The notes below the pieces were generated by a model. It did not search any database and was not told the origin of the DNA. It worked only from the letters and a program-made list of their open reading frames with translations. DNA of 62,905 bases, the filler included, from Octopus bimaculoides (taxonomy: Eukaryota): NCBI RefSeq assembly GCF_001194135.2. It is 6 parts of 6 records of this genome, joined end to end, with 100 filler letters (N's around TTAATTAATTAA, not from the genome) between each part and the next. Parts side by side here need not be neighbours in the genome. Positions count along the whole stretch, not along the records: positions 1 to 27,193 come from NC_068998.1; 5 more parts are not named here. One strand, written 5' to 3'. Below are positions 1,838 through 26,426 of the stretch, in pieces; within the stretch, counting starts at the first letter, position 1, and every line of letters begins with the position of its first letter. Position numbers and translations under genes: made by a program.

Positions 1838-3523
1838 CGCTTTACAGTGACTTACATTTTACAGGCTGCGCTGCACAGGAAAGTCCAAAACTTCTTAACG
1901 TTAGCTTCACAAGCTTCCACACAGCCGCCGTCCAAATTCAGATTTTTGATGTGGCTAATTATGTCAGTTACTGTAAAAGAAATTAGAACAATTGTTGTAC
2001 AATGATGTTTGTAATGTTAAAGTTTAACAAGTACAAGATGGCCGCGTATTCTGATTGGGAGAATGCAGTCGGGGAGACGAAAACGACAAACTGGAACCAT
2101 TAAGATTCTAACACAGAACTTAGAGATGTAACCCTGCACCGCAAGGGAATTTTCCGTTGCTCAACTGCTAATCCTTTAAATGTGATATCTACTTCTCTTC
2201 TCAGGCGCATTATTTCTCTGTTAAGTTAGTCATAAGTCCTTTTATTCTAATATCCTCATTCCTAGAACTGCTGCTCTCAAGAACTAACCACCATCGTCTT
2301 GTTTTCTTCTCAACTATGAGATTTAGTTCTTTAAGCTTTCTGTCAATCAACACCTTTTGAATATATAGCTTCCTTCTTTATCTTTATTTTATTTTTTTCT
2401 AGTCCCTTACGCCACAATGGCTTCAAACCCTGTTTGGGACTAATTCGTATAAAATAGATAGATAAATAGATAAATAAAAACCTATTACCTTTAACAATGT
2501 TTATAGCGATTTCTACTAATGCCGTCCTCCTTTAATAGTGTTTGTAACGTTCAGCCATACACAGGATATGGCTTTAAACTGCATCCGGTAGTGGGCTCTT
2601 GTTCGGGAGTTCCAAGGTTTTGAGGACTATAGAACTACCTTTTACCCACCATTGTCCCCAGATCTATTCTGACCCGAAGTAGTAGCACCCGTCAGGCCCC
2701 CAGATATACATTAAATAGCATATAATCACCCGAGCCAGGATTCATTGAAATCGGGGGATGCAGCATGGTATTTGTGAACTATTTCGACAAATGAATATAT
2801 TGAATCAGTGACGACCAAGGAGTCACGCATTGAGACTGGACCCGAAACCACATGTCTGGGAGACAAACTTCTTGCCACACAACCAAACATAAAAATTCAT
2901 TATATATTTAACGTTATGTTGGAACTGCTCAGAGGGCGTTAATGACTGCTACAAAATCAAAAAGGGATGTTTGAGTAAAAATGGCAGATGAGCACCGTTT
3001 TGGGACAAATTGAGAAAAAGAGCGTAAAAAAAAAAGAATCCGTAATCTTAAGAAGTGCAGAAGACATTGGATCGCATGATTCTGAAGGAAAGGTCGTCGC
3101 TTTGGGTGTTGACCTGGGGTTAAACAACAATAATATCATACTAATATATCTAATATATATATATATATATANNNNNNNNNNNNNNNNNNNNNNNNNNNNN
3201 NNNNNNNNNNNNNNNNNNNNNNNNNNNNNNNNNNNNNNNNNNNNNNNNNNNNNNNNNNNNNNNNNNNNNNNNNNNNNNNNNNNNNNNNNNNNNNNNNNNN
3301 NNNNNNNNNNNNNNNNNNNNNNNNNNNNNNNNNNNNNNNNNNNNNNNNNNNNNNNNNNNNNNNNNNNNNNNNNNNNNNNNNNNNNNNNNNNNNNNNNNNN
3401 NNNNNNNNNNNNNNNNNNNNNNNNNNNNNNNNNNNNNNNNNNNNNNNNNNNNNNNNNNNNNNNNNNNNNNNNNNNNNNNNNNNNNNNNNNNNNNNNNNNN
3501 NNNNNNNNNNNNNNNNNNNNNNN

Positions 3524-3578
<55 letters not shown>

Positions 3579-5847: not shown

Positions 5848-6082
5848 AAGGCGGCGAGCTGGCAGAAACGTTAGCACGCCAGGCGAAATGCTTAGCGGTA
5901 TTTCGTCTGTCTTTACGTTCTGAGTTCAAATTACACCGAGGTCGACTTTGCCTTTCATCCTTTCGGGGTCGATAAATCAAGTACCAGTTACGCACTGGGG
6001 TCGATGTAATCGACTTAATCCCTTTGTCTGTCCTTGTTTGTCCTCTCTATGTTTAGCCCCTTGTAGGCAATAAAGAAATAAG
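5848..6082 (+). mobile_element. tRNA-derived SINE, family 1 (near-consensus copy)
   Basis: AAGGCGGCGAGCTGGCAGAAACGTTAGC head, B box GAGTTCAAAT, body GCCTTTCATCCTTTCGGGGTCGATAAA; more than 12 related copies in the window. Confidence 0.85.
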
Positions 6083-6399
6083 AAGCAACGTATAAAATAA
6101 TGTAAACAAACCACCGCTCCCGCCATCGCTAAATTCGAGTGTCTCCAAATTTAGCTGACTCAGTAGCGAAGACTGCGGAATACATTTAAATCAAAAACAT
6201 TCTAGAATTACAATTCGCAAAAAATTTTGCTACTTTCTCGAAACTTTCGTTGAGCAACAGACTATTCCCAACAAAAGTGAGAGAAAAAAATCGACCGTTC
6301 TAATGTTAATTACTAGAATATTAATACTCTTATATACACAGCCGCTATTACTCTTAAAGGACACCTAGGAGAAATCTACAGTGAACAAAATAACGAAAT

Positions 6400-6870: not shown

Positions 6871-7489
6871 ACTGTATGTATTTATAATGAATAAGCAGCG
6901 TCTATTTGCAAAACCGAGAAATATTTAATGTAGTTTCTTTACTATATATGACATTTGTAGTATGGCAAGTGCACAAATAAAAGTGCAAACACATTTTGAA
7001 AAGCCTTTAATCCTTCATGTGTGTATGTGTGTGGTGGGGTGTATAGGTAGAGGTTATTTGTGTGAAATGAGGTTAGTTATTTCAATATGTGCTTCATCTG
7101 AACGACCATTTGTATTTGCGTATGCGTACATCTGTCTGTGTATGTGCAAACGCATGTATGTATGTCAGGATGTATATGTATATATGTATATATATTTGCA
7201 TAAATATATATGGATGTATGTATCTATGTATGTACATTTGAAACGAAAGTGATAGATTTTTATCTTTAATGATATTTTCATTTCACTTACTGCTGATAAC
7301 ACCGTTTAGTAATGACATATGCGTCACACGGTTGCCGCCTACTTCTAATCTCCCACTTTGTGTATGTTTATATATATATATATATATATATATNNNNNNN
7401 NNNNNNNNNNNNTATATATTCGGCGGCTGAAGGGACATGCCATATCATGTCGATATGGTGTAGCCGACTTCCAAATTGTAGTGTATAGA

Positions 7490-11016: not shown

Positions 11017-11119
11017 ATGAACAGTAACGATAAAGACACAATGGAGAAAGAAACAACACAGACAATGTGTATGGACAGAAGACCTATAGACCGTGGATGG
11101 GCCTGGGTTGTGTTGGCAG
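11017..11119 (+). CDS. MCT paralog A coding exon 1 (MNSNDKDTMEKE...DRGWAWVVLA)
   Basis: First in-frame ATG after an upstream TGA (alternative ATG at 11041); donor G|gtaaag at 11120. Confidence 0.85.
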
Positions 11120-14100
11120 GTAAAGTTATCGTTCTTTTTTCGCAGTTTAATAACAAACTCACTCAGAAATACAGATGTTTTCACGTTATACACTTGTACA
11201 CGTTGTTGAGTGTATTTATATGTGTCTGTTAGTGCGTACGTATGTTCGAGGGGGTGCTGAAAAGTTCCTGGCTTTGGGTAAAATAAAATACAAGAGGATC
11301 AGTTAATTACGATTTTATTCAACGCATACCCCTCTCAGATTCACACATTTATTGCAGCAGTCCTTCAGTTTTTCTAAGCCCTGTAAATGAACTCGGAAGG
11401 TTAGGCCGCCAACCAGACCTTTCGCGACATACATACATACATACTGATAGAGGATGTTTGACAGTTGAGAAAACAAATAAAAGTTGTAAAAAAATTCACT
11501 GAAATATTTTAAGGGATCGTTTTCATATTTATATAAGAATCTTAAAAAGTCATAAGTAGCAGATTTGAATTTGTGGAAAAGAAGCTACCCGATTTTTCAT
11601 CTATTTTTTTTATAGCTGTAACATCAATAATGACTCTTGTGGTGGGGAATATACGGCACTTCGGTATCTTTTTCTTGGAAATTCAGTATTTATTCAGTGC
11701 GTCTTCAACAGCTGTTTCATCAATTCTGAGTGTAGAATATACAACAAGTTGTTTAACAGGTAAGGATATAACATATAATACAATAATCGAAACATTTGAT
11801 AAATATGTGTGTGGGTGTGTGTGTGTGTGTGTGTAAAATGGGGAAGGCCGGTTAATGGGTTTAACTTAGGTTTCCCGTCCATAAATGTTTTAGCTTTATA
11901 ACGTATTGTCAGATCCCAAAAACCTGTTGGCCCAAGACCAAAACTTATGTAGGATACTCACCCTAGATTACGATAGACTACTAGAAAATAATATCACACA
12001 AAATTATAGGCATGCTTCCCCACACACATTCAACGACATTTACAGTGAAGCTAAAAAATTAGCTAACGAACTAGAGATGGAGGATATAGTAAAGATCTTA
12101 GCTAAAAGAAACGTCTTCATTACCATAAAAGATCATAAACAGAACTTTGCCTCAAACTTTAAATATCGCCTGATTAATCCGGCCAAATCCGAGATCGGTC
12201 TGGCGAGCAAGCACATATTGAAAAATATCAGTAACGGCGTTAGGAGGGCCATCAACCTTTCTCTGATGGTTTAACACCAACAAGGGAAGTGGCAGAGCGA
12301 GGTTCACTCACTTTGATACAGTCGACTTTTACCCGTCTATATCAAAAGGACTACTGACCAAGGCGCTTTCTTTCGTTAGGGGCTTATAGAAGTCATTATG
12401 CATGCCAGAAAGACAGTGCTGTTCAACAAAGGTTCGACATGGGTCTAGCAATCCGTCCACATGGGCTCCTTTGACGTAGCGATGGGAGTCTTCATATGCG
12501 ACCTCATCGAGTTGTATAGTCTCGATACCCTTTGGAAAAAGTCCCCCTTTGTCCTCTTTGGCCTCTACAGAGATGATGCTTCTAAAGAGATGACCGTTAA
12601 TTTCCATAATGATGAAGTTAAAAGGATTTTTAAAAACCAAACCTTGTGCAAAATTTGGTTACAATATGGTCAAAGGTACCGTATGTTGTGAAACTAGTTC
12701 TATGTGGTGAATTGTATGAAGAGGCAAGCTCCTGGATGATCCGGTTTGAATTGTAATCTAGTTTGGTTTTAATTGCTGATTTAGATCCACTCATTCCAAA
12801 ATTAGGTGTCCAATGACCTTGAGGATAGGCATGACCATCACTGAATCTTTCTTGTTTTCTTCTTGTATAAATGTAACGAGGTATAGTCTTAACAACACTT
12901 TATATAGTAATTTTCTCCATCTATCGTTTTAAGAAAAATTTCTTCGTATTCATGTTTTTCCTAAATTTACTAAAATGTTTTTTACTTTCCTCCCCCCCCT
13001 CTCTCTCTCTCTCTCTCTTTAAATTCTTCCCTTTCTCTTCCTCATATTCTTTCCTCTTCACTTTCTGTTTTTGTCCTCTTCCTTTATTCTCCTTACTTCC
13101 TTTTCTCTATTCTTTTATTTTCAAGGATTTGTAGCGATGAACCTTCTGGCAAAATTCATTTCATTCAGAACACTTGTCCTTTGTGGTTCTATTTTGTGTT
13201 CACTGACTTTTATCCTTGATTCTATTTCAAAAGATGTATTTTTACTACCGTTTATGCATATACTTAGTGGTAAGTAATTTATTAGTCTAAATTTAATAAG
13301 TTAATTAATTGTTTCTTTGACTGATGTTGTAGAACTATAAGTAGACTGTAAGTTCTAGATGAGATGAGATATCGTTACAGTTCCCTAACGCAATTGTAGC
13401 TATTTTTCTCTTCGTTCCTAACTAATAACAAAACTAACATTTCCCTTTCGTCCAAGAGTTTGGGCCACATGATCATTTGAACAATGTGACGGGAGACTAG
13501 TCCAGTCTCACTCTGCAGCATACATAAAATCAGAATCAAACACTTTGTCTAGTTATCTACCACTTAATGTCCGTCTTTTTATCTAACTCTTTACTTCATT
13601 TATAACTAAAAAAAAAAAAAAATACTTTGCTTTTTTTTTAATAATATAGTCACGTATGAAAAAGTAGTGCCTGAATTTTTTCAGGCTCAACATGACTAGT
13701 GGAATTGGTTAAGGTTTATTGTCCAACTTCGACAGATATAGGTCGATGTGTGTAGAAAAACCGACTGCACAGAAAACAAATTTATGGCCACTTTGAATTG
13801 GTCATCCACAGACCTATGTTATCCCTGCATACAGAACAGCTTACCCAGATACAATCTGGCTGACCTGATCCAGTATGTCCATGTCTACATTAGCACATTT
13901 GCGGAATACAGTTGATACTCGTTTGACAGTTGGAAAGGCTTGTACAGACTTGTGAGGTTTTTGTACCCCTCTCACATCAGCTAGCCTCACGCAGTCCCAT
14001 TATGCTTCCAAGATACCTTTCCAATCTGTCACAAATGCTAAAAAGAGAATGTTTCCAGAGAAAACTTTAGAACCCTGGAGAAATCTGGTTGCCCGAAACA

Positions 14101-17100
14101 GAAAATCCTCAGGTGGTTTGTGCAACCGCATATGTGATATCTTGGCTTTTTGCTATCATTCATCACACACAGTTGAAAACCACCTGAGAGATTGATCGAA
14201 TCTGGGATGGCTTCCATATTTTCTTGATTTGTCTGAGCCAATAGCGTCATTCCTTGAGCCGACTAATTTTTCTTCTGAAGCCTGTACACGTGCAATATGC
14301 TCATTCCCCACCCCCTGTATCTAGCAAAATAGCCGCTACTCGCCGGCAAATATCCATTTCTTGTGGAACATTGACCACCTTTATTTTTATCACTCTTCGT
14401 CGTTCTGTCTTTATTTATCGGTACCCGAAGGATGGAAAACAAAAATAATATGGCTGAGTCATTTGAACTTAACTAAACACAGCATTTTATCCAGTGCGCT
14501 TCCCTTTCTTGCATGTACCACTTGAATGTTGTCACAATTATAATGCAGCGAGCTGGCAGAGTCGTTAGTGTTAGAAAAATCGTTTTGTATGCGTAAGTCT
14601 AAATTTGTCTTTTAATGTATTTTATGACGCATCTTACCAACTCCTTTCGCAATTTGTAAACGTCCAAGCGTATTTTGCCTCACTCCATATTGTTCTCTCT
14701 TTCTTTGTAACTGTCAGAGTAAGTTTCATATCTTTTGTATCTACTTGATTGACTAATAAAGAATTAAGATAATTATTGTCGTCATCATCGTCTTCGTTTA
14801 GATTTGTGACTATGCAAATTATTAGTATCAACATGATAAAGGGTTTCTAATTTAGGCACAAGGCCAGCTAATTTGAAGCGAGGTGTTTAGTCGATACTGT
14901 CTACTCCAGTATGAGACTGGTACTTTATTTTATTTTATCGATCCCGAAAGTATGAAAGGCAAAGTTTACCTCGGAGGAATTTGTACTCAGTACGCAAAGA
15001 GCCGGAACAAATACCGCCAAGCATACTCTAACAATTCCACCAGTCGGCCGCCTTATCATCGTAATAACAGCATTCGATTGTCAGATGTTAGAAACGGGAG
15101 AGAATTAGGCTAAATGCCGTGCTTAGTTACATCCCGTGTCTTCCGTGTTCAAATCCTTCCACCACTGACTAGACTTTTTATCCTTCTGGTTCCGATAAAT
15201 AAAGGTAAGTTTAAAACCCTATGCTCTCCCTTGCCTAAATTGGATTGGATTGCCTAAATTGGATTGCTTCAAAACAATCTCTCCACCAGAGAATGGTTTG
15301 AGATCATACTGGTTTGATGAGCCCATCTACCGTACTGGCTCGACATGGCTTGGCAGAGGGATGCAGTTTTTTAATACTCATATACAGGAGTAGCTAAATC
15401 GATTACACAGACTCCAGTGCTTTACTGATACATAAATATCGCCTAAATACTTACAGTTACATACTAAGATTCATAGAACACTTCTTCCAAATTTTAAATT
15501 CATAATTAGCAGCAACAATATTATCTATAATTTTTTATATTTTTTTCTTCCTCTCTCTCTTTTTCTCGCTCTAATATTAGGTGCTGGACTTGCTTTCTTG
15601 TATGGACCTAGCACAGTTATCCTGAGTACCTACTTTAACCGCTACCTTGGCACAGCAAATGCGATAGCTGCTTGTGGAGTTAGCGTCGGACAATTCATCT
15701 TCCCGTATTTAATCAACTACCTTATAATAACCTACGGAGTCCGTGGAGCTCTTCTTCTGGATGCTGGTATTTGTCTACAATGTCTTGTTTTTGGCGCCCT
15801 TCTACGTCCCATCAGTTGCTACGACACAACAACACGTTCGAAAGTCATCAATTCTACCGATGTAGAGCTAAATGATAGAAATACGACTGCTAAAGGAGGA
15901 AAACAAACTGAATCGATGAAACTACAATCAGACGATGAAGGAGAAATCTCTCCGTTTTTGACGGACTCAAAAGACAGAAATAGCTGTGGAAATGTTAACT
16001 TGCAATCGGTGGAACTAAGTGAGTCGTTTGTTTTAAAAGGAAAAGATTGTGCTTATTCAAGTGAAAAATCTTCCTGTGAGATAAAGGAAAGCATCACAGA
16101 AAATGACGCCAAAACGCATTCAGAACGTTTATTTGATGGACTTAGAAGAAACTTGCAAAAATGTTTGGCTGCTGCAGATTTAACTCTGTTCCAGGAAAAA
16201 GTATTCCTCTGTGGATATATTGGAATAATTCTTGGGAACACCGTTTCCGCCATACCATTAACGTATTTTCCAGCTCACGCTATAGACTTAGGCTTATCCA
16301 CTGAGGACGGTGCTACTTTTCTGACAGTTGCTGGGGTAACCAATTTTGCGGGTCGTCTGTTAATGGTTTTCTTGGCTGACCGAAGGTCTTTGAATCGTGG
16401 TCGAATGCTTGGCGTTACCCTCATCATTCATGGAATAGCTGCTTGTTTTATATCATACTACACCAAATTCCTGCTATTCGTTATATATTGCGCCTGCAAT
16501 GGGCTCGCTACTGGCTTATATTTTTCAATTTCAATCACAGTTATGGTGGATCTTATTGGATCTCAAAGAATGTCGGGCGCAATGGGCTTCATTATATTTG
16601 GAAATGGAATATTAGGAACAGTAGCATATTCTTTTTGTGGTAAGTATTTCTTCTGGGCTATTTTTCATATTCTTTTAAGCTATCTGCATTTTAAAAGATT
16701 TTGTTTTAAAAATCTAGTTAAACTCCTTCAAACCAAATCTACATTCTAGCTTCAGTTCTCCATCGAAATCGTTCTACTTCGTTAATTCTCTCGATAAAAA
16801 GGTACGAACAATTCTAGATAGCACATTGAACTAGCACAGAGACATAATCAATAGAGCAATTGAACACCTGAAAATCTTGTCGCTGGGTGGAATTTCGTAA
16901 TACAAAACGTATTTTTGCCCCAGTGTTTCCACGTTCATTGACTTCTACGTGACAAGCACTCAATAGCAGAAGAGGTTTCGAGTTTTGGAACTCCACATTA
17001 CAGAAAGATTTTCGGGACACAACGCTTCCGCACATCGGAAGATGCTTGTGTACATAGTTTTAATGGTGATTGATTGGAGATATCGGTAGAACATTGGCAC

Positions 17101-17964
17101 TTAATTGTGTCGGCTTATGTTCTATTCTCAAATTCAACCGTGACGGACTTTGCTTTCCAGTTCCCTGTAGTCTTTCCAATAACTACCCATTAAATTCTGA
17201 GCCAAAATCAAGATGTGTCTTATCTGAGATATGACATTTAGTTGCTTCCTTTTTTGTTCTGAATTCGAATCCTACCAAAGACGACTCTGCTTTCACGTTT
17301 CAAGATCTCTATAACAGTCGATATAATTTCAGTTTCCTCCAACATGTGTTACCATATACCTGCACTAGAAATCAGTTCTATGTTATATATCTCCCAGTAT
17401 TCTGCTATGGGTGAAGGTACGTGGCTTAGTGGTTAACGTATTCGGCTCACGATCGTAAGATTGTGAGTTCAAATCTACGGTGGCGCGTTGTGTCCTTGAG
17501 CAAGACACTTTATTTCATGTTGCTCCAGCCCACTCAGCTGGCAAAAAAGATTTGGGTCTGTGTTTCAAAGAGGTCAACCTTTGACACGTTCTGTGTCACG
17601 CTGAAACTGCCTGAGAATTATGTTGTGGGTATTCGGGTCTGTAGAGCGCTCAGCCACTTGCAAGTTAATTTCACGAGCAGGCTGTTCCGTTGATCGCATT
17701 GACTGGAATACTTTCGGTCGTAACTGACGGAGTGCCAGTTATTCTGCTATGAAATAACAATTTCAATTACCTTTTTTTTCTTTTTTTTTTTAATATATTT
17801 TCTTTATGTAACGTTTGTTTTATTCCACAGGTTACTTTCGTGACGTCACTGGTTCTTACAACCTCGGTTTCCTTTTGAACGGAGTCGGCCTTCTCTTAAG
17901 CGGTACCTTGGTTCTCTTGGCGGCTTTCTTATCGTACAACAAACAATCGAGGGAAGAGCTGTAA
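11017..17964 (+). CDS. SLC16/monocarboxylate transporter family gene (paralog A), 5 coding exons, about 527 aa; member not assignable
   Basis: Exons 11017-11119, 11616-11759, 13126-13269, 15581-16639 and 17831-17964 join in frame through GT-AG phase-1 introns (1584 nt). MCT hallmarks: PIDRGWAW before TM1, RHFGIFF, YFNRYLGTANAIA, GALLRP, large central loop, GRLLMVFLAD, GYFRDVTGSY. Confidence 0.93.
11247..11428 (-). mobile_element. Mariner 3' end fragment in intron 1 of MCT A
   Basis: CGAGGGGGTGCTGAAAAGTTCC TIR-like end; minus strand reads LQGLEKLKDCCNKCVNLRGVCVE*. Confidence 0.75.
11616..11759 (+). CDS. MCT paralog A exon 2 (TM1-TM2)
   Basis: ttttttttatag acceptor, 144 nt, AVTSIMTLVVGNIRHFGIFFLEIQ...SCLT, donor G|gtaagg. 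Confidence 0.9.
11900..12600 (+). mobile_element. Penelope-like element RT fragment (Naiad-type motifs), in intron 2 of MCT A
   Basis: FITIKDHKQNFASNFKYRLINPAKSEIG; FDTVDFYPSISKGLL; IMHARKTVLF; MGSFD..GLYRDD; broken by stops and frameshifts. Confidence 0.85.
13126..13269 (+). CDS. MCT paralog A exon 3 (TM3-TM4)
   Basis: Long pyrimidine tract then tttcaag acceptor, 144 nt, GFVAMNLLAKFISFRTLVLCGSILCS...HILS, donor G|gtaagt. Confidence 0.88.
14038..14400 (-). mobile_element. Zinc-knuckle gag/ORF1-like relic in intron 3 of MCT A
   Basis: KVVNVPQEMDICRRVAAILLD and TLLAQTNQENMEAIPDSINLSGGFQLCVMNDSKKPRYHICGCTNHLRIFC align with the 19715-20272 copy; first Cys of the knuckle is Tyr. Confidence 0.7.
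14845..15056 (-). mobile_element. Family-1 SINE in intron 3 of MCT A
   Basis: GAAAGGCAAAGTTTACCTCGGAGGAATTTGTACTCAG. Confidence 0.7.
15581..16639 (+). CDS. MCT paralog A exon 4 (TM4-TM11 and central loop)
   Basis: ctaatattag acceptor, 1059 nt open, GAGLAFLYGPS...YSFC, donor G|gtaagt; overlaps track ORF 15598..16749. Confidence 0.95.
17413..17741 (+). mobile_element. tRNA-derived SINE family 2 (CORE-like centre), intron 4 of MCT A
   Basis: GTGGCTTAGTGGTTAA A box, GAGTTCAAAT B box, TGTGTCCTTGAGCAAGACACTTT; related copies at 27498-27655 and 46392-46700. Confidence 0.75.
17831..17964 (+). CDS. MCT paralog A exon 5 (TM12 and C-terminus)
   Basis: ttccacag acceptor, GYFRDVTGSYNLGFLLNGVGLLLSG...REEL*. 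Confidence 0.92.
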
Positions 17965-18278
17965 CTGCTATCATTACCGTGGTCAGCATTACTGTGCGCT
18001 TACCGACATATTCCACAACACCGAGAACAACAGATTAGCAGAATTAGAAAACTACACAGCAAAAGTGTTTGCTGCTGGTGTTTCACTTCCTTCACTCTCG
18101 TCATGAATTCAAATCCTGTTGTGGCTGACTTTATTTTATGTCCCTTCGTTCTTGATGAAAATAACAACAAATTAAACCCCGAGAGGACAAGTTCAGCAAA
18201 ATTGAAATAATTTATGGTATTGTGCTGGCAATCACATAATTTATGGTATTGTGCTAACAAAAACTACATTCAGCATCA

Positions 18279-18316
<38 letters not shown>

Positions 18317-19049
18317 NNNNNNNNNNNNNNNNNNNNNNNNNNNNNNNNNNNNNNNNNNNNNNNNNNNNNNNNNNNNNNNNNNNNNNNNNNNNNNNNNNNN
18401 NNNNNNNNNNNNNNNNNNNNNNNNNNNNNNNNNNNNNNNNNNNNNNNNNNNNNNNNNNNNNNNNNNNNNNNNNNNNNNNNNNNNNNNNNNNNNNNNNNNN
18501 NNNNNNNNNNNNNNNNNNNNNNNNNNNNNNNNNNNNNNNNNNNNNNNNNNNNNNNNNNNNNNNNNNNNNNNNNNNNNNNNNNNNNNNNNNNNNNNNNNNN
18601 NNNNNNNNNNNNNNNNNNNNNNNNNNNNNNNNNNNNNNNNNNNNNNNNNNNNNNNNNNNNNNNNNNNNNNNNNNNNNNNNNNNNNNNNNNNNNNNNNNNN
18701 NNNNNNNNNNNNNNNNNNNNNNNNNNNNNNNNNNNNNNNNNNNNNNNNNNNNNNNNNNNNNNNNNNNNNNNNNNNNNNNNNNNNNNNNNNNNNNNNNNNN
18801 NNNNNNNNNNNNNNNNNNNNNNNNNNNNNNNNNNNNNNNNNNNNNNNNNNNNNNNNNNNNNNNNNNNNNNNNNNNNNNNNNNNNNNNNNNNNNNNNNNNN
18901 NNNNNNNNNNNNNNNNNNNNNNNNNNNNNNNNNNNNNNNNNNNNNNNNNNNNNNNNNNNNNNNNNNNNNNNNNNNNNNNNNNNNNNNNAACGGCACCACA
19001 ACCAGAAACTCTACTGAGACACACAGAAAACACAAGAACAAAAGTGACA

Positions 19050-19330
19050 GTCGCGGTTTCGCATCCGCTGCCAGACGGAGCAAAGTTGCTCGTGATAGTG
19101 GAGGGGCGTAAACCCAGGTGCTACCTATGTGGACAGGAAGACCATTTCAAAGCCTTCTGTCCACTGGGAGCAAGAGATAAAAACTGCCCTCCCCCAGCAA
19201 AGGCGGCACCTCAACAAACAGTCAACGCAAGATGCGTCACAAGTCTTCCCACCACCAACCGAAACAGCCAAGGGACACTAAACGTAAGTGTCGAGGATTT
19301 AGAAAAGTTCAACAACCAAATACAAAGAAG
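19050..19330 (+). mobile_element. Zinc-knuckle gag/ORF1-like fragment
   Basis: LPDGAKLLVIVEGRKPRCYLCGQEDHFKAFC (C-x2-C-x4-H-x4-C). Confidence 0.75.
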
Positions 19331-19429
19331 TGGCATAAATGTATTATTAACCCTGCCTTGATAAATTACACAACACACAGCACGAAAAAACAGTCATCTA
19401 CAAAACATTATCCCTAAAAAGCAGGAAAA

Positions 19430-19714: not shown

Positions 19715-20750
19715 TTGGGGAGAAATCAATTACGTGGCCAGAGGGGAAAATATGGCACTGTGGAGGTGAGGTTCGCTTCAGAAGACGAAACAAAAGAACA
19801 TTTTACAGTCACCCTAGAAACGAACGAACTAGTGATGCTGCCGGCCTACTTGGGTCGAAGAGGGTCGAAAGTAAAAATTGGGGAGGTTCCCCCAGAGATT
19901 GACGTCCAGTGGGTAGTGACAGTGGTCATGCTTGATATAGAGGATCAAATAAACATCTTACACGTAAACAAACTGCACCAACAGAACTGGTGGGGACAGG
20001 AGCTTGAAATGCTAATTCAAGCAAACTAGAGGGACCTCGAGTATATTCCAGACCTGATAAACTTGCCAGACGGAGCAAAGTTGCTCGTGATAGTGGAGGG
20101 GCGTAGACCCAGGTGCTACCTATGTGGACAGAAAGACCATTTCAAAGCCTTCTGTCCACTGGGAGCAAGAGATAAAAACTGCCCTCCCCCAGCAAAGGCG
20201 GCACCTCAACAAACAGTCAACGCAAGATGCGTCACAAGTCTTCCCACCACCAACCGAAACAGCCAAGCCTGAACAACTCATAGACCAGTTATCAACTTTC
20301 ACAGCAGAGAAGATCGCTACAGACCAGTTAACACCAATAGAGACAAATGCACACCCAAAGAAAAAGTATCGCTTTGCGCAGAACTAACCATCGAAACAGC
20401 GACCTCAACTCCTTTGAAAGAAACCCAATCATCCAACCTAAAGGATCTATCACCTACCCAGTTGGACACTGTTGGACCCAAGGAAGCCAACAGCAAGGAC
20501 TGGAGATACCCAAAAGAAAAAAAAAGAAGAAAAGTATCCACCACAACACAGACACCCAACCACCACCACACATATATTACCTACACCACCAGCACCGCAC
20601 GCCAAACGCACAGTCACAAACTTCACAGCCATGAACGTTACAAACACATCTCTCATGAAACACATACAACACAACATAGACATTGCACCAACCAATCTTA
20701 TTAGCACGCTACCGCATACAAGCACATACAAATAGTAAAAATAAACAATG
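19715..20750 (+). pseudogene. Longest zinc-knuckle gag/ORF1-like copy, disrupted
   Basis: Track ORFs 19715..20029 and 20063..20272 share a frame and are split by TAG 20027-20029; CCHC at 20114-20155; basic/Thr-rich tail (PKEKKRRKVS) in shifted frames; AATAAA at 20740; no RT follows. Confidence 0.7.
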
Positions 20751-21415: not shown

Positions 21416-22839
21416 AAAAAAACAAATCGTATTTTTTCATTGTCAACTCACTGTGTCTAATCGAAAGGAAAGAGTTTCTTCCCTTCCAGGGTTAAGTTAT
21501 TTTCGGTGAATTTTTCCATTATGCACCGTTTTGGGCATTTATGCCTTGAAAATCCTAATATCTTCACCAGATTTAAGCAGAACTTGTTTTTATTCCATTC
21601 GTNNNNNNNNNNNNNNNNNNNNNNNNNNNNNNNNNNNNNNNNNNNNNNNNNNNNNNNNNNNNNNNNNNNNNNNNNNNNNNNNNNNNNNNNNNNNNNNNNN
21701 NNNNNNNNNNNNNNNNNNNNNNNNNNNNNNNNNNNNNNNNNNNNNNNNNNNNNNNNNNNNNNNNNNNNNNNNNNNNNNNNNNNNNNNNNNNNNNNNNNNN
21801 NNNNNNNNNNNNNNNNNNNNNNNNNNNNNNNNNNNNNNNNNNNNNNNNNNNNNNNNNNNNNNNNNNNNNNNNNNNNNNNNNNNNNNNNNNNNNNNNNNNN
21901 NNNNNNNNNNNNNNNNNNNNNNNNNNNNNNNNNNNNNNNNNNNNNNNNNNNNNNNNNNNNNNNNNNNNNNNNNNNNNNNNNNNNNNNNNNNNNNNNNNNN
22001 NNNNNNNNNNNNNNNNNNNNNNNNNNNNNNNNNNNNNNNNNNNNNNNNNNNNNNNNNNNNNNNNNNNNNNNNNNNNNNNNNNNNNNNNNNNNNNNNNNNN
22101 NNNNNNNNNNNNNNNNNNNNNNNNNNNNNNNNNNNNNNNNNNNNNNNNNNNNNNNNNNNNNNNNNNNNNNNNNNNNNNNNNNNNNNNNNNNNNNNNNNNN
22201 NNNNNNNNNNNNNNNNNNNNNNNNNNNNNNNNNNNNNNNNNNNNNNNNNNNNNNNNNNNNNNNNNNNNNNNNNNNNNNNNNNNNNNNNNNNNNNNNNNNN
22301 NNNNNNNNNNNNNNNNNNNNNNNNNNNNNNNNNNNNNNNNNNNNNNNNNNNNNNNNNNNNNNNNNNNNNNNNNNNNNNNNNNNNNNNNNNNNNNNNNNNN
22401 NNNNNNNNNNNNNNNNNNNNNNNNNNNNNNNNNNNNNNNNNNNNNNNNNNNNNNNNNNNNNNTATATATATATATATATGTATGTATGCATGTATGTATG
22501 TATGTATATATACATTTACATATATATCTATTATGAATATAATAACGCTGAATTTAATTTCTTTGAGTGGCATAATATCACGAAGTCTCCATTTGGTTGA
22601 TCTCGGGATTTAATTGGTTGTTATTTTACCGACACCCTAGGAATGGAAAGAAATGTCAATCACACCCGGATTTGAACTCAGAGCAGGGAAGAGAGTACCG
22701 CCTGCAAACCATTTTGTCCTGTACTCTACTTATTATGTCAATCTGCCGCTGTCCTCGGTGTTATGGAATGTGTCGACAGTGACACAATTGATATTGACCA
22801 TGTTGGTGACAACAATCACAGCTCTTCTATCAATGTTTC

Positions 22840-22949
22840 TTATACGGGTATAAAGGTCGCCACGAGAAACGAAGCACCGCTTATGAGTAGGCAGACACCG
22901 TTCAGAATGAACCCAAGATTGTAAGAACCAGTGACGTCACGAAGGTAAC
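22840..22949 (-). CDS. SLC16/MCT paralog B terminal exon
   Basis: ttattccacag acceptor identical to A; GYLRDVTGSYNLGFILNGVCLLISGASFLVATFIPV*. Confidence 0.9.
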
Positions 22950-24393: not shown

Positions 24394-24398
<5 letters not shown>

Positions 24399-24612
24399 CC
24401 GTTAGCACACCGGGCGAAATGCTTAGCGGTATTTCGTCTGCCCGCTACGTTCTGAGTTCAAATTCCGCCGAGGTCGACTTTGCCTTTCATCCTTTCGGGG
24501 TCGATTAAATAAGTACCAGTTACGCACTGGGGTCGATATAATCGATTTAATCCGTTTGTCTGTCTTTGTTTGTCCCCTCTGTGTGTAGCCCCTTGTGGGC
24601 AGTAAAGAAATA
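24394..24612 (+). mobile_element. Family-1 SINE, young copy, in the last intron of MCT B
   Basis: Very close to the 5848 copy; flanked by (CA)n and (CT)n. Confidence 0.85.
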
Positions 24613-24625
24613 ACACACACACACA

Positions 24626-25307: not shown

Positions 25308-26426
25308 CTGTAAGTGGATAACCGATTGTTCCAATTATTCCTGAGCCTAATATCAACAAACCGACTGCATCCGACATTCTTTGAGATCCAATAAAATCCA
25401 CCATGACTGTGTTCGAGATGGAAAAATATATACCACTGGAGATTCCATAACAGGCGCAATACATTGCGAACAGAAAGAATTTGGTATAGAATGATACAAA
25501 GCAAGCAGCAACTCCATGAATGATGAGGATAACGCCAAGCAGTCGACCTCGGTTCAAAAATTTTCGGTCAGCTAAGAAAACCATGAGCAGACGACCCACA
25601 AAATCGGCCACCCCACCAACTGTAAGAAAAACAACTCCGTCCTCAGTGGACAAGTCTAAGTCTACAGCATGAGCTGGGAAAAATGCCTGTGGCATGGAGG
25701 AAGCTGCGGCTCCAAGAATTGCTCCAATGTATCCAGAGATAAATTTTTTTTCCCTGAACAGAGCAAAATCTNNNNNNNNNNNNNNNNNNNNNNNNNNNNN
25801 NNNNNNNNNNNNNNNNNNNNNNNNNNNNNNNNNNNNNNNNNNNNNNNNNNNNNNNNNNNNNNNNNNNNNNNNNNNNNNNNNNNNNNNNNNNNNNNNNNNN
25901 NNNNATTTTTCGATTGAATAAGCGCTTTTGTCACCGTCTTTTAAATCGGTTCGTTCTTTAATTGTTACAAGTGACGACAAAGGTGAGTCCATAGTCGATT
26001 CTTGTGATCCCACTGAATGCAAGCTATCTCTGTCTTTTGAGTCTGTCAAAAACGGAGAGATTTCTCCGTCATCGTCTGATTGTTGTTTTATCGATTCGGT
26101 TTGTTTTTCCCCTTTAACAGTCGTATTTCTTTCATTTAGTTCTATGTCAGTAGAACTGATGACTTTCAAACGTGTTGTTGTATCGTAGCAACTGATGGGA
26201 CGTAGAAGGGCGCCAAAAACAAGGCATTGTAGATAAATACCAGCATTCAGAAGAAGAGCTCCACGGACTCCGTAGGTTATTATAAGGTAGTTGAGTATGT
26301 ACGGAAGGGTGAACTGTCCGACGCTAACACCACAAGCAGATATCGCATTTGCTGTGCCAAGGTAGCGTTTAAAGTAGGTACTCTGCATAACTATGCAAGA
26401 TCCGTATATAAAAGCCAGTCCAGCAC
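25308..26426 (-). CDS. SLC16/MCT paralog B, exon equivalent to A exon 4 (contains an N gap)
   Basis: Acceptor atattag|GTGCTGGA and donor G|gtaagt at the same positions as in A; GAGLAFIYGSCIVMQSTYFKRYLG...YPLT; no stops in the sequenced part. Confidence 0.92.

What the first reader, a model, noticed from the sequence alone, without database searches (positions are those of the whole stretch)
16342..16356. MCT paralogs differ by a single A/G at the proton-coupling Asp of TM8: a natural D309N, one A-to-I edit away from reversion
Seen: A reads GVT-N-FAG-R (AAT 16342-16344, CGT 16354-16356); B reads GVA-D-FVG-R (GAT 25605-25603, CGT 25593-25591). Established: the D-x3-R pair of TM8 is human MCT1 D309/R313, central to H+ coupling, and D309N disables transport and was used to trap the inward-open state. 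A keeps a basic residue at the K38 position (RHFGIFF). Established: coleoid cephalopods recode mRNA extensively by A-to-I editing, and AAT edited at position 1 reads as GAT. Inference: A is either an uncoupled transporter or a switch toggled between Asn and Asp by editing.
Basis: partly seen in the sequence, partly recalled or inferred. Interest (0 to 1): 0.75.

Follow-up and report, generated by a model that had tools for sequence, protein, structure and literature searches.

The report
Octopus MCT paralog lacking proton-site Asp
One of two neighbouring octopus monocarboxylate-transporter (SLC16) genes carries asparagine where MCT1-type transporters have the proton-accepting aspartate, but the change is fixed in the genome, read unedited in the RNA available, and is a kind of natural variation already known in this family.

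Summary
Gene A (+ strand, 5 exons, 527 aa) reads GVT-N-FAG-R (AAT 16342-16344, CGT 16354-16356). Gene B (- strand) reads GVA-D-FVG-R. HMMER alignments to solved human MCT1 and MCT2 place N385 on D309 and R389 on R313.

The Asn is derived. All close cephalopod paralogs and 91% of the basic-38 class of relatives keep Asp. It is in the genome: five DNA runs agree.

Gene A is intact, spliced, transcribed at low level and under purifying selection (omega about 0.45). It keeps family-conserved residues as well as its sisters do.

The editing-switch idea is not supported. RNA contigs from three libraries read A at 16342, with no A>G anywhere in about 1.1 kb of transcript. There is no unusual local RNA duplex. 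Low-level editing could not be tested because no raw reads cover the site.

Loss of this Asp is not exotic. About 25% of the 150 nearest SLC16 cluster representatives have Asn there, almost always with Tyr/Phe at position 38. Human MCT8 has Ser. Copy A's combination (basic 38 + Asn 309 + Arg 313) is rare, at 2 of about 98.

Most likely this is a diverged paralog that no longer uses MCT1-style Asp-mediated proton coupling. It is a new member of a known kind, of modest interest.

The parts
11017..11119 (+). Gene A exon 1 (ATG; MNSNDKDTMEKE...GWAWVVLA; includes the DRGWAW motif before TM1)
   Evidence: tblastn with P0002; GT donor, phase 1
11616..11759 (+). Gene A exon 2 (TM1-TM2). It holds R48 (CGG 11654-11656), the K38 equivalent, and H49 (CAC 11657-11659).
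13126..13269 (+). Gene A exon 3 (TM3-TM4)
   Evidence: AG/GT splice sites
15581..16639 (+). Gene A exon 4 (TM5-TM6, long cytoplasmic loop, TM7-TM11)
   Evidence: The GT..AG junction 16638/16639 to 17830/17831 is seen in an RNA contig of X14.
16300..16374 (+). TM8 of protein A (residues 371-395, TEDGATFLTVAGVTNFAGRLLMVFL)
   Evidence: AlphaFold2 helix 371-395; the 381-390 block has pLDDT 93; translation
16342..16344 (+). AAT = Asn385, at the position of Asp309 of human MCT1 (Asp302 in rat)
   Evidence: Genomic A in five DNA runs. A in RNA contigs of three runs.
16354..16356 (+). CGT = Arg389, at the position of Arg313 of human MCT1
17831..17967 (+). Gene A exon 5 (TM12, C-terminus, stop at 17965-17967)
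25308..26425 (-). Gene B exon 4 (orthologue of O. sinensis P0002), interrupted by an N gap. GAT = Asp at 25605-25603 and CGT = Arg at 25593-25591.
22840..22949 (-). Gene B exon 5 (YLRDVTGSYNLG...FIPV, stop). The upstream exons of B lie beyond the piece's edge.

Best explanation
The window holds two convergently oriented (tail-to-tail) SLC16 (monocarboxylate-transporter family) genes of an octopus. The protein names point to Octopus bimaculoides.

Copy A is the earliest-branching and fastest-evolving of at least three Octopus paralogs. It is a real, intact gene that is spliced and weakly expressed, and it is under purifying selection. On its own branch the TM8 aspartate changed to asparagine through a G-to-A substitution that is fixed in the genome. 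That aspartate pairs with the TM8 arginine and, in MCT1, accepts the proton that triggers the outward-to-inward switch. The mRNA is translated as Asn.

Inferred, not shown: protein A no longer runs an MCT1-style Asp-mediated proton-coupled cycle. It probably works as an uncoupled or differently coupled carrier with altered substrate or charge preference. Its cavity keeps two arginines (R48, R389) without the counter-charge. Precedents are the non-proton-coupled MCT8/MCT10, which have Ser at this position, and the large Tyr/Phe38-Asn309-Arg313 class of SLC16 proteins.
For: - Family and position: phmmer to PDB aligns N385/R389 with residue 309/313 of MCT1 and MCT2. The same column holds across 150 relatives and in a MAFFT alignment with human MCT1. 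The AlphaFold2 model's best structural matches are MCT1, MCT2, MCT8 and MCT10 (TM-score on target 0.83-0.88), and N385 is mid-helix in TM8.
- Derived state: sisters P0002-P0005 and outgroups P0012-P0016 have Asp. The tree is (Argonauta,(A,(P0004,(O. sinensis,B)))).
- Real gene: 5 exons, all GT/AG, 527-aa ORF, with a spliced RNA contig.
- Selection: dN/dS for A against B is 0.44 and for A against O. sinensis 0.45-0.57, with dS about 0.39. A deviates at 15 of 77 family-conserved columns, against 12-17 for its sisters. Only S49H, D385N and P481S are unique to A.
- Fixed in DNA.
- Unedited in RNA.
- Precedent: D309 corresponds to Ser in MCT8 (PMC12078798). Asn occurs in about 38 of about 154 relatives.
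- D309N abolishes MCT1 transport at all pH values tested (PMC9982067).
Against: - No functional data exist for this clade, so whether its Asp-bearing members are proton-coupled at all is unknown.
- They carry Arg, not Lys, at position 38, and K38R is inactive in MCT1.
- In the Asn-bearing class, position 38 is almost always Tyr/Phe (32 of 32 aromatic-38 members with Asn or an acidic residue). That precedent does not cover A's basic-38 + Asn combination, which is rare (P0033 and P0136 only). In MCT1 it is a dead, inward-locked protein.
- Omega on A's branch (about 0.47) is higher than for B against O. sinensis (0.32-0.36), which is compatible with some relaxation.
- Expression is low and narrow: only 2 of about 20 RNA libraries of the species hold the transcript.
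- Copy A appears to be absent at the syntenic place in O. sinensis.
Confidence: 0.6

Rival explanations
1. Editing switch (restorative recoding). ADAR edits the first A of AAT at 16342, so part of the mRNA encodes Asp. This toggles the transporter between uncoupled/locked and proton-coupled forms.
For: Coleoids recode extensively, and restorative editing of ancestral G-to-A substitutions is documented (PMC6881472). The substitution here is an ancestral G-to-A at a conserved site. Low-level editing could not be measured, because the raw RNA runs X24-X26 gave 0-1 reads on exon 4.
Against: RNA contigs of X13 (depth 4.6), X14 (2.8) and X16 (2.4) all read A at 16342, and no A>G appears anywhere in about 1.1 kb of transcript A. 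Folding of 301 nt around the site is no more stable than shuffles (z = +0.25). Published median restorative editing levels are below 2.5%, and a harm-permitting role at an essential residue would need high editing. The two supplement files held for PMC8382921 had no monocarboxylate or SLC16 entry.
Confidence: 0.04
2. Catalytically dead copy. With Asn at 385 the protein is locked or inactive, like MCT1 D309N. Either it is drifting toward loss, or it has a non-transport role such as binding, sensing or partnering.
For: D309N and R313N MCT1 are non-functional at every pH tested, and D309N fixes the inward-open state (PMC9982067). A's basic-38 + Asn combination is rare among relatives, at 2 of about 98. 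Omega is somewhat raised, expression is low and narrow, and the copy is apparently lost in O. sinensis.
Against: The ORF is intact over 527 codons and all four introns have canonical splice sites, despite dS of about 0.3 on this branch. Omega is clearly below 1: 60.5 synonymous against 88.5 non-synonymous differences, where neutrality predicts about 1:3. Family-conserved residues are kept as well as in the sisters. The same triad recurs independently in a Littorina protein (P0033).
Confidence: 0.25
3. Still proton-coupled by another route. A different titratable residue takes over proton handling, so coupling is kept without Asp385. His49, newly acquired next to Arg48, is one candidate.
For: S49H is one of only three A-unique departures from family-conserved columns, and it sits next to the K38 equivalent. 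So two of the three unique changes fall at or next to the charge triad.
Against: This is a post-hoc observation. Residue i+1 on a helix points about 100 degrees away from residue i. The tool gives no coordinates to check that H49 faces the cavity, and there are no functional data.
Confidence: 0.1
4. Artefact. The Asn codon is an assembly or polishing error, a rare allele, or a chimera of paralogs.
For: Elsewhere in the same exon the window does disagree with every read set, at 15760, 15773 and 15783. So the assembly is not flawless here.
Against: Five DNA runs and three RNA runs give contigs through 16342 that are identical to the window. An independent protein record, P0001, also has Asn.
Confidence: 0.01

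Closest known systems
Human MCT1 (SLC16A1), including the engineered D309N mutant (PDB 7DA5)
   Same: Same fold and family, with top sequence and structure matches. Same TM8 position: A has N-x3-R where MCT1 has D309-x3-R313. There is a basic residue at position 38. A's triad is literally that of MCT1 D309N, except that position 38 is Arg rather than Lys.
   Different: Only about 19% identity. Position 38 is Arg in the whole octopus clade, and K38R is inactive in MCT1. The TM6-7 loop is much longer. A's substrate, coupling and ancillary partner are unknown. D309N is an inactive laboratory mutant, whereas A is a conserved natural gene.
Human MCT8/MCT10 (SLC16A2/SLC16A10), facilitative carriers that are not proton-coupled
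   Same: SLC16 members that naturally lack the TM8 Asp while keeping the TM8 Arg that binds the substrate carboxylate. D309 corresponds to S367 (short isoform) in MCT8, and R313 to R371 (PMC12078798). They are structural matches of the model.
   Different: They have Ser, not Asn. They carry their own Tyr/Asp pair in TM7/TM10 for thyroid-hormone transport. They are not close relatives of the octopus clade.
Tyr/Phe38-Asn309-Arg313 class of invertebrate SLC16 proteins (automatically named 'MCT12-like', 'MCT5-like' or 'MCT9-like' in spiders, bees and snails)
   Same: Asn at the same TM8 position with Arg four residues on. The class is abundant, at about 32 of the 150 nearest cluster representatives.
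   Different: Position 38 is aromatic, not basic. This is a separate subfamily (A is about 27-31% identical). In A the Asn is a recent change within an Asp-bearing clade.
Restorative (harm-permitting) A-to-I editing in coleoids (Jiang & Zhang 2019, PMC6881472)
   Same: The genomic situation fits the definition of a potential restorative site: an ancestral G replaced by A at a nonsynonymous, conserved position.
   Different: The defining event, A-to-G in RNA, was looked for and not seen at the consensus level.

Membership tests
SLC16 / monocarboxylate transporter family (MFS) | 12-TM major-facilitator fold with a long cytoplasmic loop between TM6 and TM7 | tested here: met
   Pfam MFS_1, E = 3.7e-23. 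The AlphaFold2 model has 12 long helices and a disordered loop at 210-307.
SLC16 / monocarboxylate transporter family (MFS) | Closest solved relatives by sequence and by structure are SLC16 members | tested here: met
   phmmer hits are MCT2, MCT1, MCT10 and MCT8 only. Foldseek ranks 1-12 are MCT1, MCT2 and MCT8, TM-score on target 0.80-0.88.
SLC16 / monocarboxylate transporter family (MFS) | Signature [D/E]G[G/S][W/F][G/A]W leading into TM1 (motif recalled from Halestrap & Price 1999) | tested here: met
   A has D25-R-G27-W28-A29-W30. D, G, W, A and W match columns conserved at 81-100% in relatives. The second position is R instead of G.
SLC16 / monocarboxylate transporter family (MFS) | TM5 signature YFxK[R/K][R/L]xLAx[G/A]xAxAG (motif recalled from memory) | tested here: inconclusive
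   A has YFNRYLGTANAIAACG. Y, F, A, N-A and G are kept, but K->R, R->L and L->T are shared with all octopus sisters.
SLC16 / monocarboxylate transporter family (MFS) | Conserved TM8 arginine (R313 of MCT1) that binds the carboxylate | tested here: met
   R389 aligns with R313.
Proton-coupled MCT1-4 type | Lys at position 38 (TM1) | tested here: not met
   Arg48 in A and Arg in all octopus paralogs. K38R is inactive in MCT1.
Proton-coupled MCT1-4 type | Asp at position 309 (TM8), paired with Arg313 | tested here: not met
   Asn385 in A. Asp is present in B and the other paralogs.
Proton-coupled MCT1-4 type | H+-coupled lactate/pyruvate transport, and dependence on basigin or embigin | not testable with these tools
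   Needs expression and flux assays.
A-to-I recoding site | Genomic A read as G in cDNA of the same organism | tested here: not met
   A in five DNA runs and A in RNA contigs of three runs. Contigs drop minor variants and depth is only 2.4-4.6, so editing below roughly half of molecules is not excluded.
A-to-I recoding site | The site lies in a stable RNA duplex | tested here: inconclusive
   301-nt local fold gives -69.9 kcal/mol against -71.1 +/- 4.7 for shuffles, z = +0.25. Long-range pairing was not examined.
Restorative (harm-permitting) editing | The edited state equals an ancestral amino acid lost by a G-to-A substitution | tested here: met
   Asp is the state of all sisters and outgroups. 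This is only the precondition. The editing itself was not observed.

The most novel reading that the evidence does not exclude
Tissue- or temperature-dependent restorative A-to-I editing at 16342 converts a fraction of transcript A from Asn385 to Asp385. One gene would then yield both an uncoupled (or locked) and a proton-coupled transporter. This would be a post-transcriptional switch placed exactly on the catalytic proton acceptor. The available RNA evidence excludes only majority editing, in three low-depth libraries of unknown tissue.
Probability: 0.04. Interest if true: 0.6.

Novelty: new member of a known kind. Interest (0 to 1): 0.25.

Why it matters
If protein A is an active carrier, it is a natural experiment. 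It has the MCT1 D309N configuration (basic residue at 38, Asn at 309, Arg at 313) in a protein kept by selection, next to sister copies that retain Asp.

Comparing A, A-N385D, B and B-D-to-N in one assay would show whether the TM8 Asp is needed for proton coupling outside MCT1-4. It would also show what a cavity with two uncompensated arginines transports.

The family-wide pairing seen here (basic 38 with acidic 309, aromatic 38 with Asn 309) offers a simple sequence rule for sorting orphan SLC16 proteins into likely coupled and uncoupled types. Still, loss of this Asp is already known in the family and the editing idea has no support, so the finding is of modest interest.

Tried and rejected
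1. Direct editing measurement. The three raw RNA runs of 2026 (X24-X26) gave 0-1 reads on exon 4. Only assembled contigs of X13, X14 and X16 cover the site, so only the majority base could be read.
2. A second run search with exon 5 and the 3' UTR found no further RNA library holding the transcript.
3. Editing catalogues. The supplements held for PMC8382921 contain no monocarboxylate or SLC16 entry. The 2017 Cell catalogue (the id I tried, PMC5499236) is not held.
4. Laying DNA contigs on a short stretch (16100-16640) returned nothing, probably because contigs overhanging both ends were dropped. Repeating with 13300-18200 worked.
5. Looking for A's orthologue beside the O. sinensis gene found none within 10 kb.
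6. Calibrating the triad classes against vertebrate MCT5-14 failed. All 20 representatives I named are invertebrate.
7. I first equated A's FSIS[I/N]TVMVD position with 'F360'. That mixed rat and human numbering. Rat F360 is human F367, which aligns with T (A) or S (B) in G-L-A-T-G. The claim was dropped.
8. I considered the TM6 Asn-to-Asp change (LLLDAG) as a compensating charge. It was rejected because no read set supports that base, and TM6 is a peripheral helix.
9. The Foldseek match to outward-open rather than inward-open MCT1 is not taken as evidence about conformational preference.

Full report
**What is there**

The piece carries two SLC16 genes arranged tail to tail.

Gene A is on the + strand and has five coding exons: 11017-11119, 11616-11759, 13126-13269, 15581-16639 and 17831-17967. 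All introns are GT/AG and phase 1. Together the exons give an uninterrupted 527-aa protein.

Gene B is on the - strand. Its large exon (about 26425-25308, interrupted by an N gap) and last exon (22949-22840) are present. Its upstream exons lie beyond the edge.

Protein names of near-identical database entries point to Octopus bimaculoides. Pfam calls both proteins MFS_1. The only solved relatives by sequence are MCT2, MCT1, MCT10 and MCT8. An AlphaFold2 model of A has mean pLDDT 70, with TM helices around 85 and disordered termini and TM6-7 loop. It matches MCT1, MCT2, MCT8 and MCT10 best, with TM-score on target 0.80-0.88.

**The observation**

A reads GVT-N-FAG-R and B reads GVA-D-FVG-R, and the Asn and Asp codons differ by one A/G.

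HMMER aligns A's N385/R389 with residue 309/313 of human MCT1 at high posterior probability. The D309N mutant chain 7DA5 actually scores better than wild type. The same column is recovered in a profile alignment of about 150 relatives. It is recovered again in a MAFFT alignment with human MCT1, whose numbering I checked against HMMER-printed fragments. In the model, N385 lies mid-helix in TM8, in the most confident block. I could not extract a residue-level structural superposition, so the position rests on sequence alignment plus helix placement.

R48 (NIRHFGIFF) aligns with K38.

**Is it genomic and fixed?**

Yes. Contigs of five DNA runs from different samples and years (X1, X2, X3, X5, X7) span 15795-17468 without a single difference.

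**Is gene A alive?**

- An RNA contig of X14 joins 16638/16639 to 17830/17831 across a GT..AG intron. X13 and X14 cover exon 4 and the 3' UTR but not the flanking introns.
- Expression is low (word depth 3-5). The transcript is found in only two of about twenty RNA libraries of the species.
- Nei-Gojobori estimates over exons 4-5 give dS 0.40 and omega 0.44 for A against B. For A against the O. sinensis gene they give dS 0.38 and omega 0.57 overall, or dS 0.39 and omega 0.45 in TM regions. For B against O. sinensis they give dS 0.156 and omega 0.36.
- A therefore separated before the two species did. The branch leading to A has omega of about 0.47, which is constrained though somewhat less so than B.
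- An NJ tree gives (Argonauta,(A,(P0004,(O. sinensis,B)))).
- At 77 columns conserved in at least 60% of Asp/Glu-class outgroups, A deviates 15 times and its sisters 12-17 times. Only three deviations are unique to A: S49H, D385N and P481S.
- So A is a well-kept protein in which the TM8 Asp, 91% conserved in that class, has been specifically replaced.

**Family context**

phmmer against 1.84 billion representatives gave 8,060 homologues. I tallied the best 150, plus the ten, at the three MCT1 key positions.

| Position 38 | Position 309 | Count |
|---|---|---|
| basic | Asp or Glu | 88 |
| basic | Asn | 2 (P0033 Littorina saxatilis; P0136) |
| Tyr/Phe | Asn | 32 |
| Tyr/Phe | Asp or Glu | 0 |

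Fisher's exact test gives p = 2e-27, not corrected for phylogeny. Small numbers have Ser, Gly or Cys at 309.

Asn at this position is thus common, at about 25%. It belongs to another subclass, one that automatic annotation calls MCT12-, MCT5- or MCT9-like in spiders, bees and snails. All close cephalopod paralogs and the nearest outgroups are Arg-Asp-Arg.

From the literature:
- D309/R313/K38 are essential in MCT1. D309N and R313N are inactive at all pH values tested, and D309N fixes the inward-open state. R313N occurs naturally in MCT12 (PMC9982067).
- D302/R306 (rat numbering) form a charge pair whose geometry is critical (PMC2409183).
- K38R is inactive (PMC2740427 abstract).
- In MCT8, which is not proton-coupled, D309 corresponds to Ser while the Arg is kept (PMC12078798).

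**Editing**

- RNA contigs of X13 (depth 4.6), X14 (2.8) and X16 (2.4, labelled as a different organism, one G>C difference at 16400) read A at 16342. Across about 1.1 kb of transcript A there is no A>G at all.
- Contigs suppress minor variants. This excludes majority editing in those libraries, but not low-level or tissue-specific editing.
- The three runs kept as raw reads had essentially no reads on the gene.
- The 301 nt around the site fold no better than shuffled sequence (z = +0.25).
- The idea corresponds to published 'restorative editing', whose median level is below 2.5% (PMC6881472).
- From my own recollection of cephalopod editome sizes, which I did not check here, a few percent of coding adenosines are detectably edited. 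I put about 4% on meaningful editing at this site.

**Mechanism**

Shown:
- There is a derived, fixed and expressed Asn at the proton-acceptor position, in an otherwise conserved SLC16 paralog.

Inferred:
- Without the carboxylate, the Asp-Arg salt bridge cannot operate. Protonation of that bridge triggers the conformational switch in MCT1. So A cannot couple to protons in the MCT1 way.
- Its cavity keeps R48 and R389 without the counter-charge, a net +2 instead of +1. This would favour anion binding without a proton, or a more acidic substrate.
- MCT8/10 and the Asn class show that SLC16 carriers work without this Asp.

The main caveat is that those proteins do not have a basic residue at 38 together with Asn. 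In MCT1 that exact configuration is dead, so a non-transporting or decaying copy remains a serious rival (0.25).

**Verdict**

The 'editing switch' half is unsupported. The gene is a new member of a known kind. Interest is about 0.25.

Noticed in passing
window 15760, 15773, 15783 (gene A exon 4): Every DNA run (X1, X2, X3, X5, X7) reads A, A, C where the window has G, G, T. The reads lie on a 112-nt contig at about 2.7x single-copy depth. Read that way, the window's Asp in LLLDAG becomes Asn and its Cys in GICLQC becomes Tyr, which are the states of all sister paralogs. The third change is synonymous. This is a probable assembly or polishing error, or a rare allele.
   Followed up: partly
window 15697-15783: In run X3, one contig that starts in A's intron (15342-15824) carries five further paralog-like differences (15697 A>G, 15700 T>C, 15702 C>T, 15709 T>G, 15712 A>C). 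This looks like a polymorphic gene-conversion tract from a paralog into gene A.
   Followed up: no
window 6873-7352 versus L001 32014-32491: This unique 87%-identical anchor lies 15.5 kb from B's 3' end in the window, but 8.5 kb from the 3' end of the orthologous O. sinensis gene. The 7-kb difference equals the span of gene A. No A-like exon is found within 10 kb in O. sinensis. So A seems to be absent there, even though dS says it predates the species split.
   Followed up: partly
window 11654-11659 (R48, H49): Next to the K38-equivalent Arg, copy A alone has His where relatives have Ser (60% conserved). So two of the three A-unique departures from conserved columns lie at or beside the charge triad.
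   Followed up: no
relatives P0011-P0158 (alignment columns of A residues 48 and 385): There is strong pairing across SLC16 relatives: basic 38 goes with Asp/Glu 309 (88), and Tyr/Phe 38 goes with Asn 309 (32). Only 2 are basic+Asn and none aromatic+acidic. The test is not corrected for phylogeny.
   Followed up: partly
window 11017-11119 (exon 1 of A): Exon 1 of A is almost identical in protein to exon 1 of the O. sinensis B-orthologue P0002, including the first 17 residues (MNSNDKDTMEKETTQTM). The rest of A is only about 63% identical to it. This uneven divergence suggests exchange between paralogs.
   Followed up: no
window 17400-17790 (intron 4 of A): An extremely high-copy repeat: word depth 60,000-340,000 in DNA runs against 4-56 for flanking single-copy sequence. 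It is also abundant in the RNA contig sets.
   Followed up: no
window 5849-6084 and 24394-24613; L001 several places: A short interspersed repeat of about 220 bp. It is present twice in the window and at least seven times in the 33-kb O. sinensis locus, at 84-95% identity.
   Followed up: no
window 19044-19361 and 19715-20029 (between A and B); 11906-12640 (intron 2 of A): ORFs that look like mobile-element remnants. One has a CCHC zinc-knuckle-like string (CYLCGQEDHFKAFC). None was searched against any library.
   Followed up: no
window about 25772-25906 (exon 4 of B) and other N runs (about 3180-3560, 18320-18990, 21600-22470): Assembly gaps. The one inside B's large exon removes part of the cytoplasmic loop, and explains why the database model P0003 is shortened.
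   Followed up: no
window 16400: The RNA contig of run X16, labelled as a different organism, is identical to gene A over 229 nt except G>C at 16400 (Gly to Ala in NRGR; other cephalopods have Ala there). It also reads Asn at codon 385. So a very close relative, or a mislabelled sample, shares the Asn.
   Followed up: no
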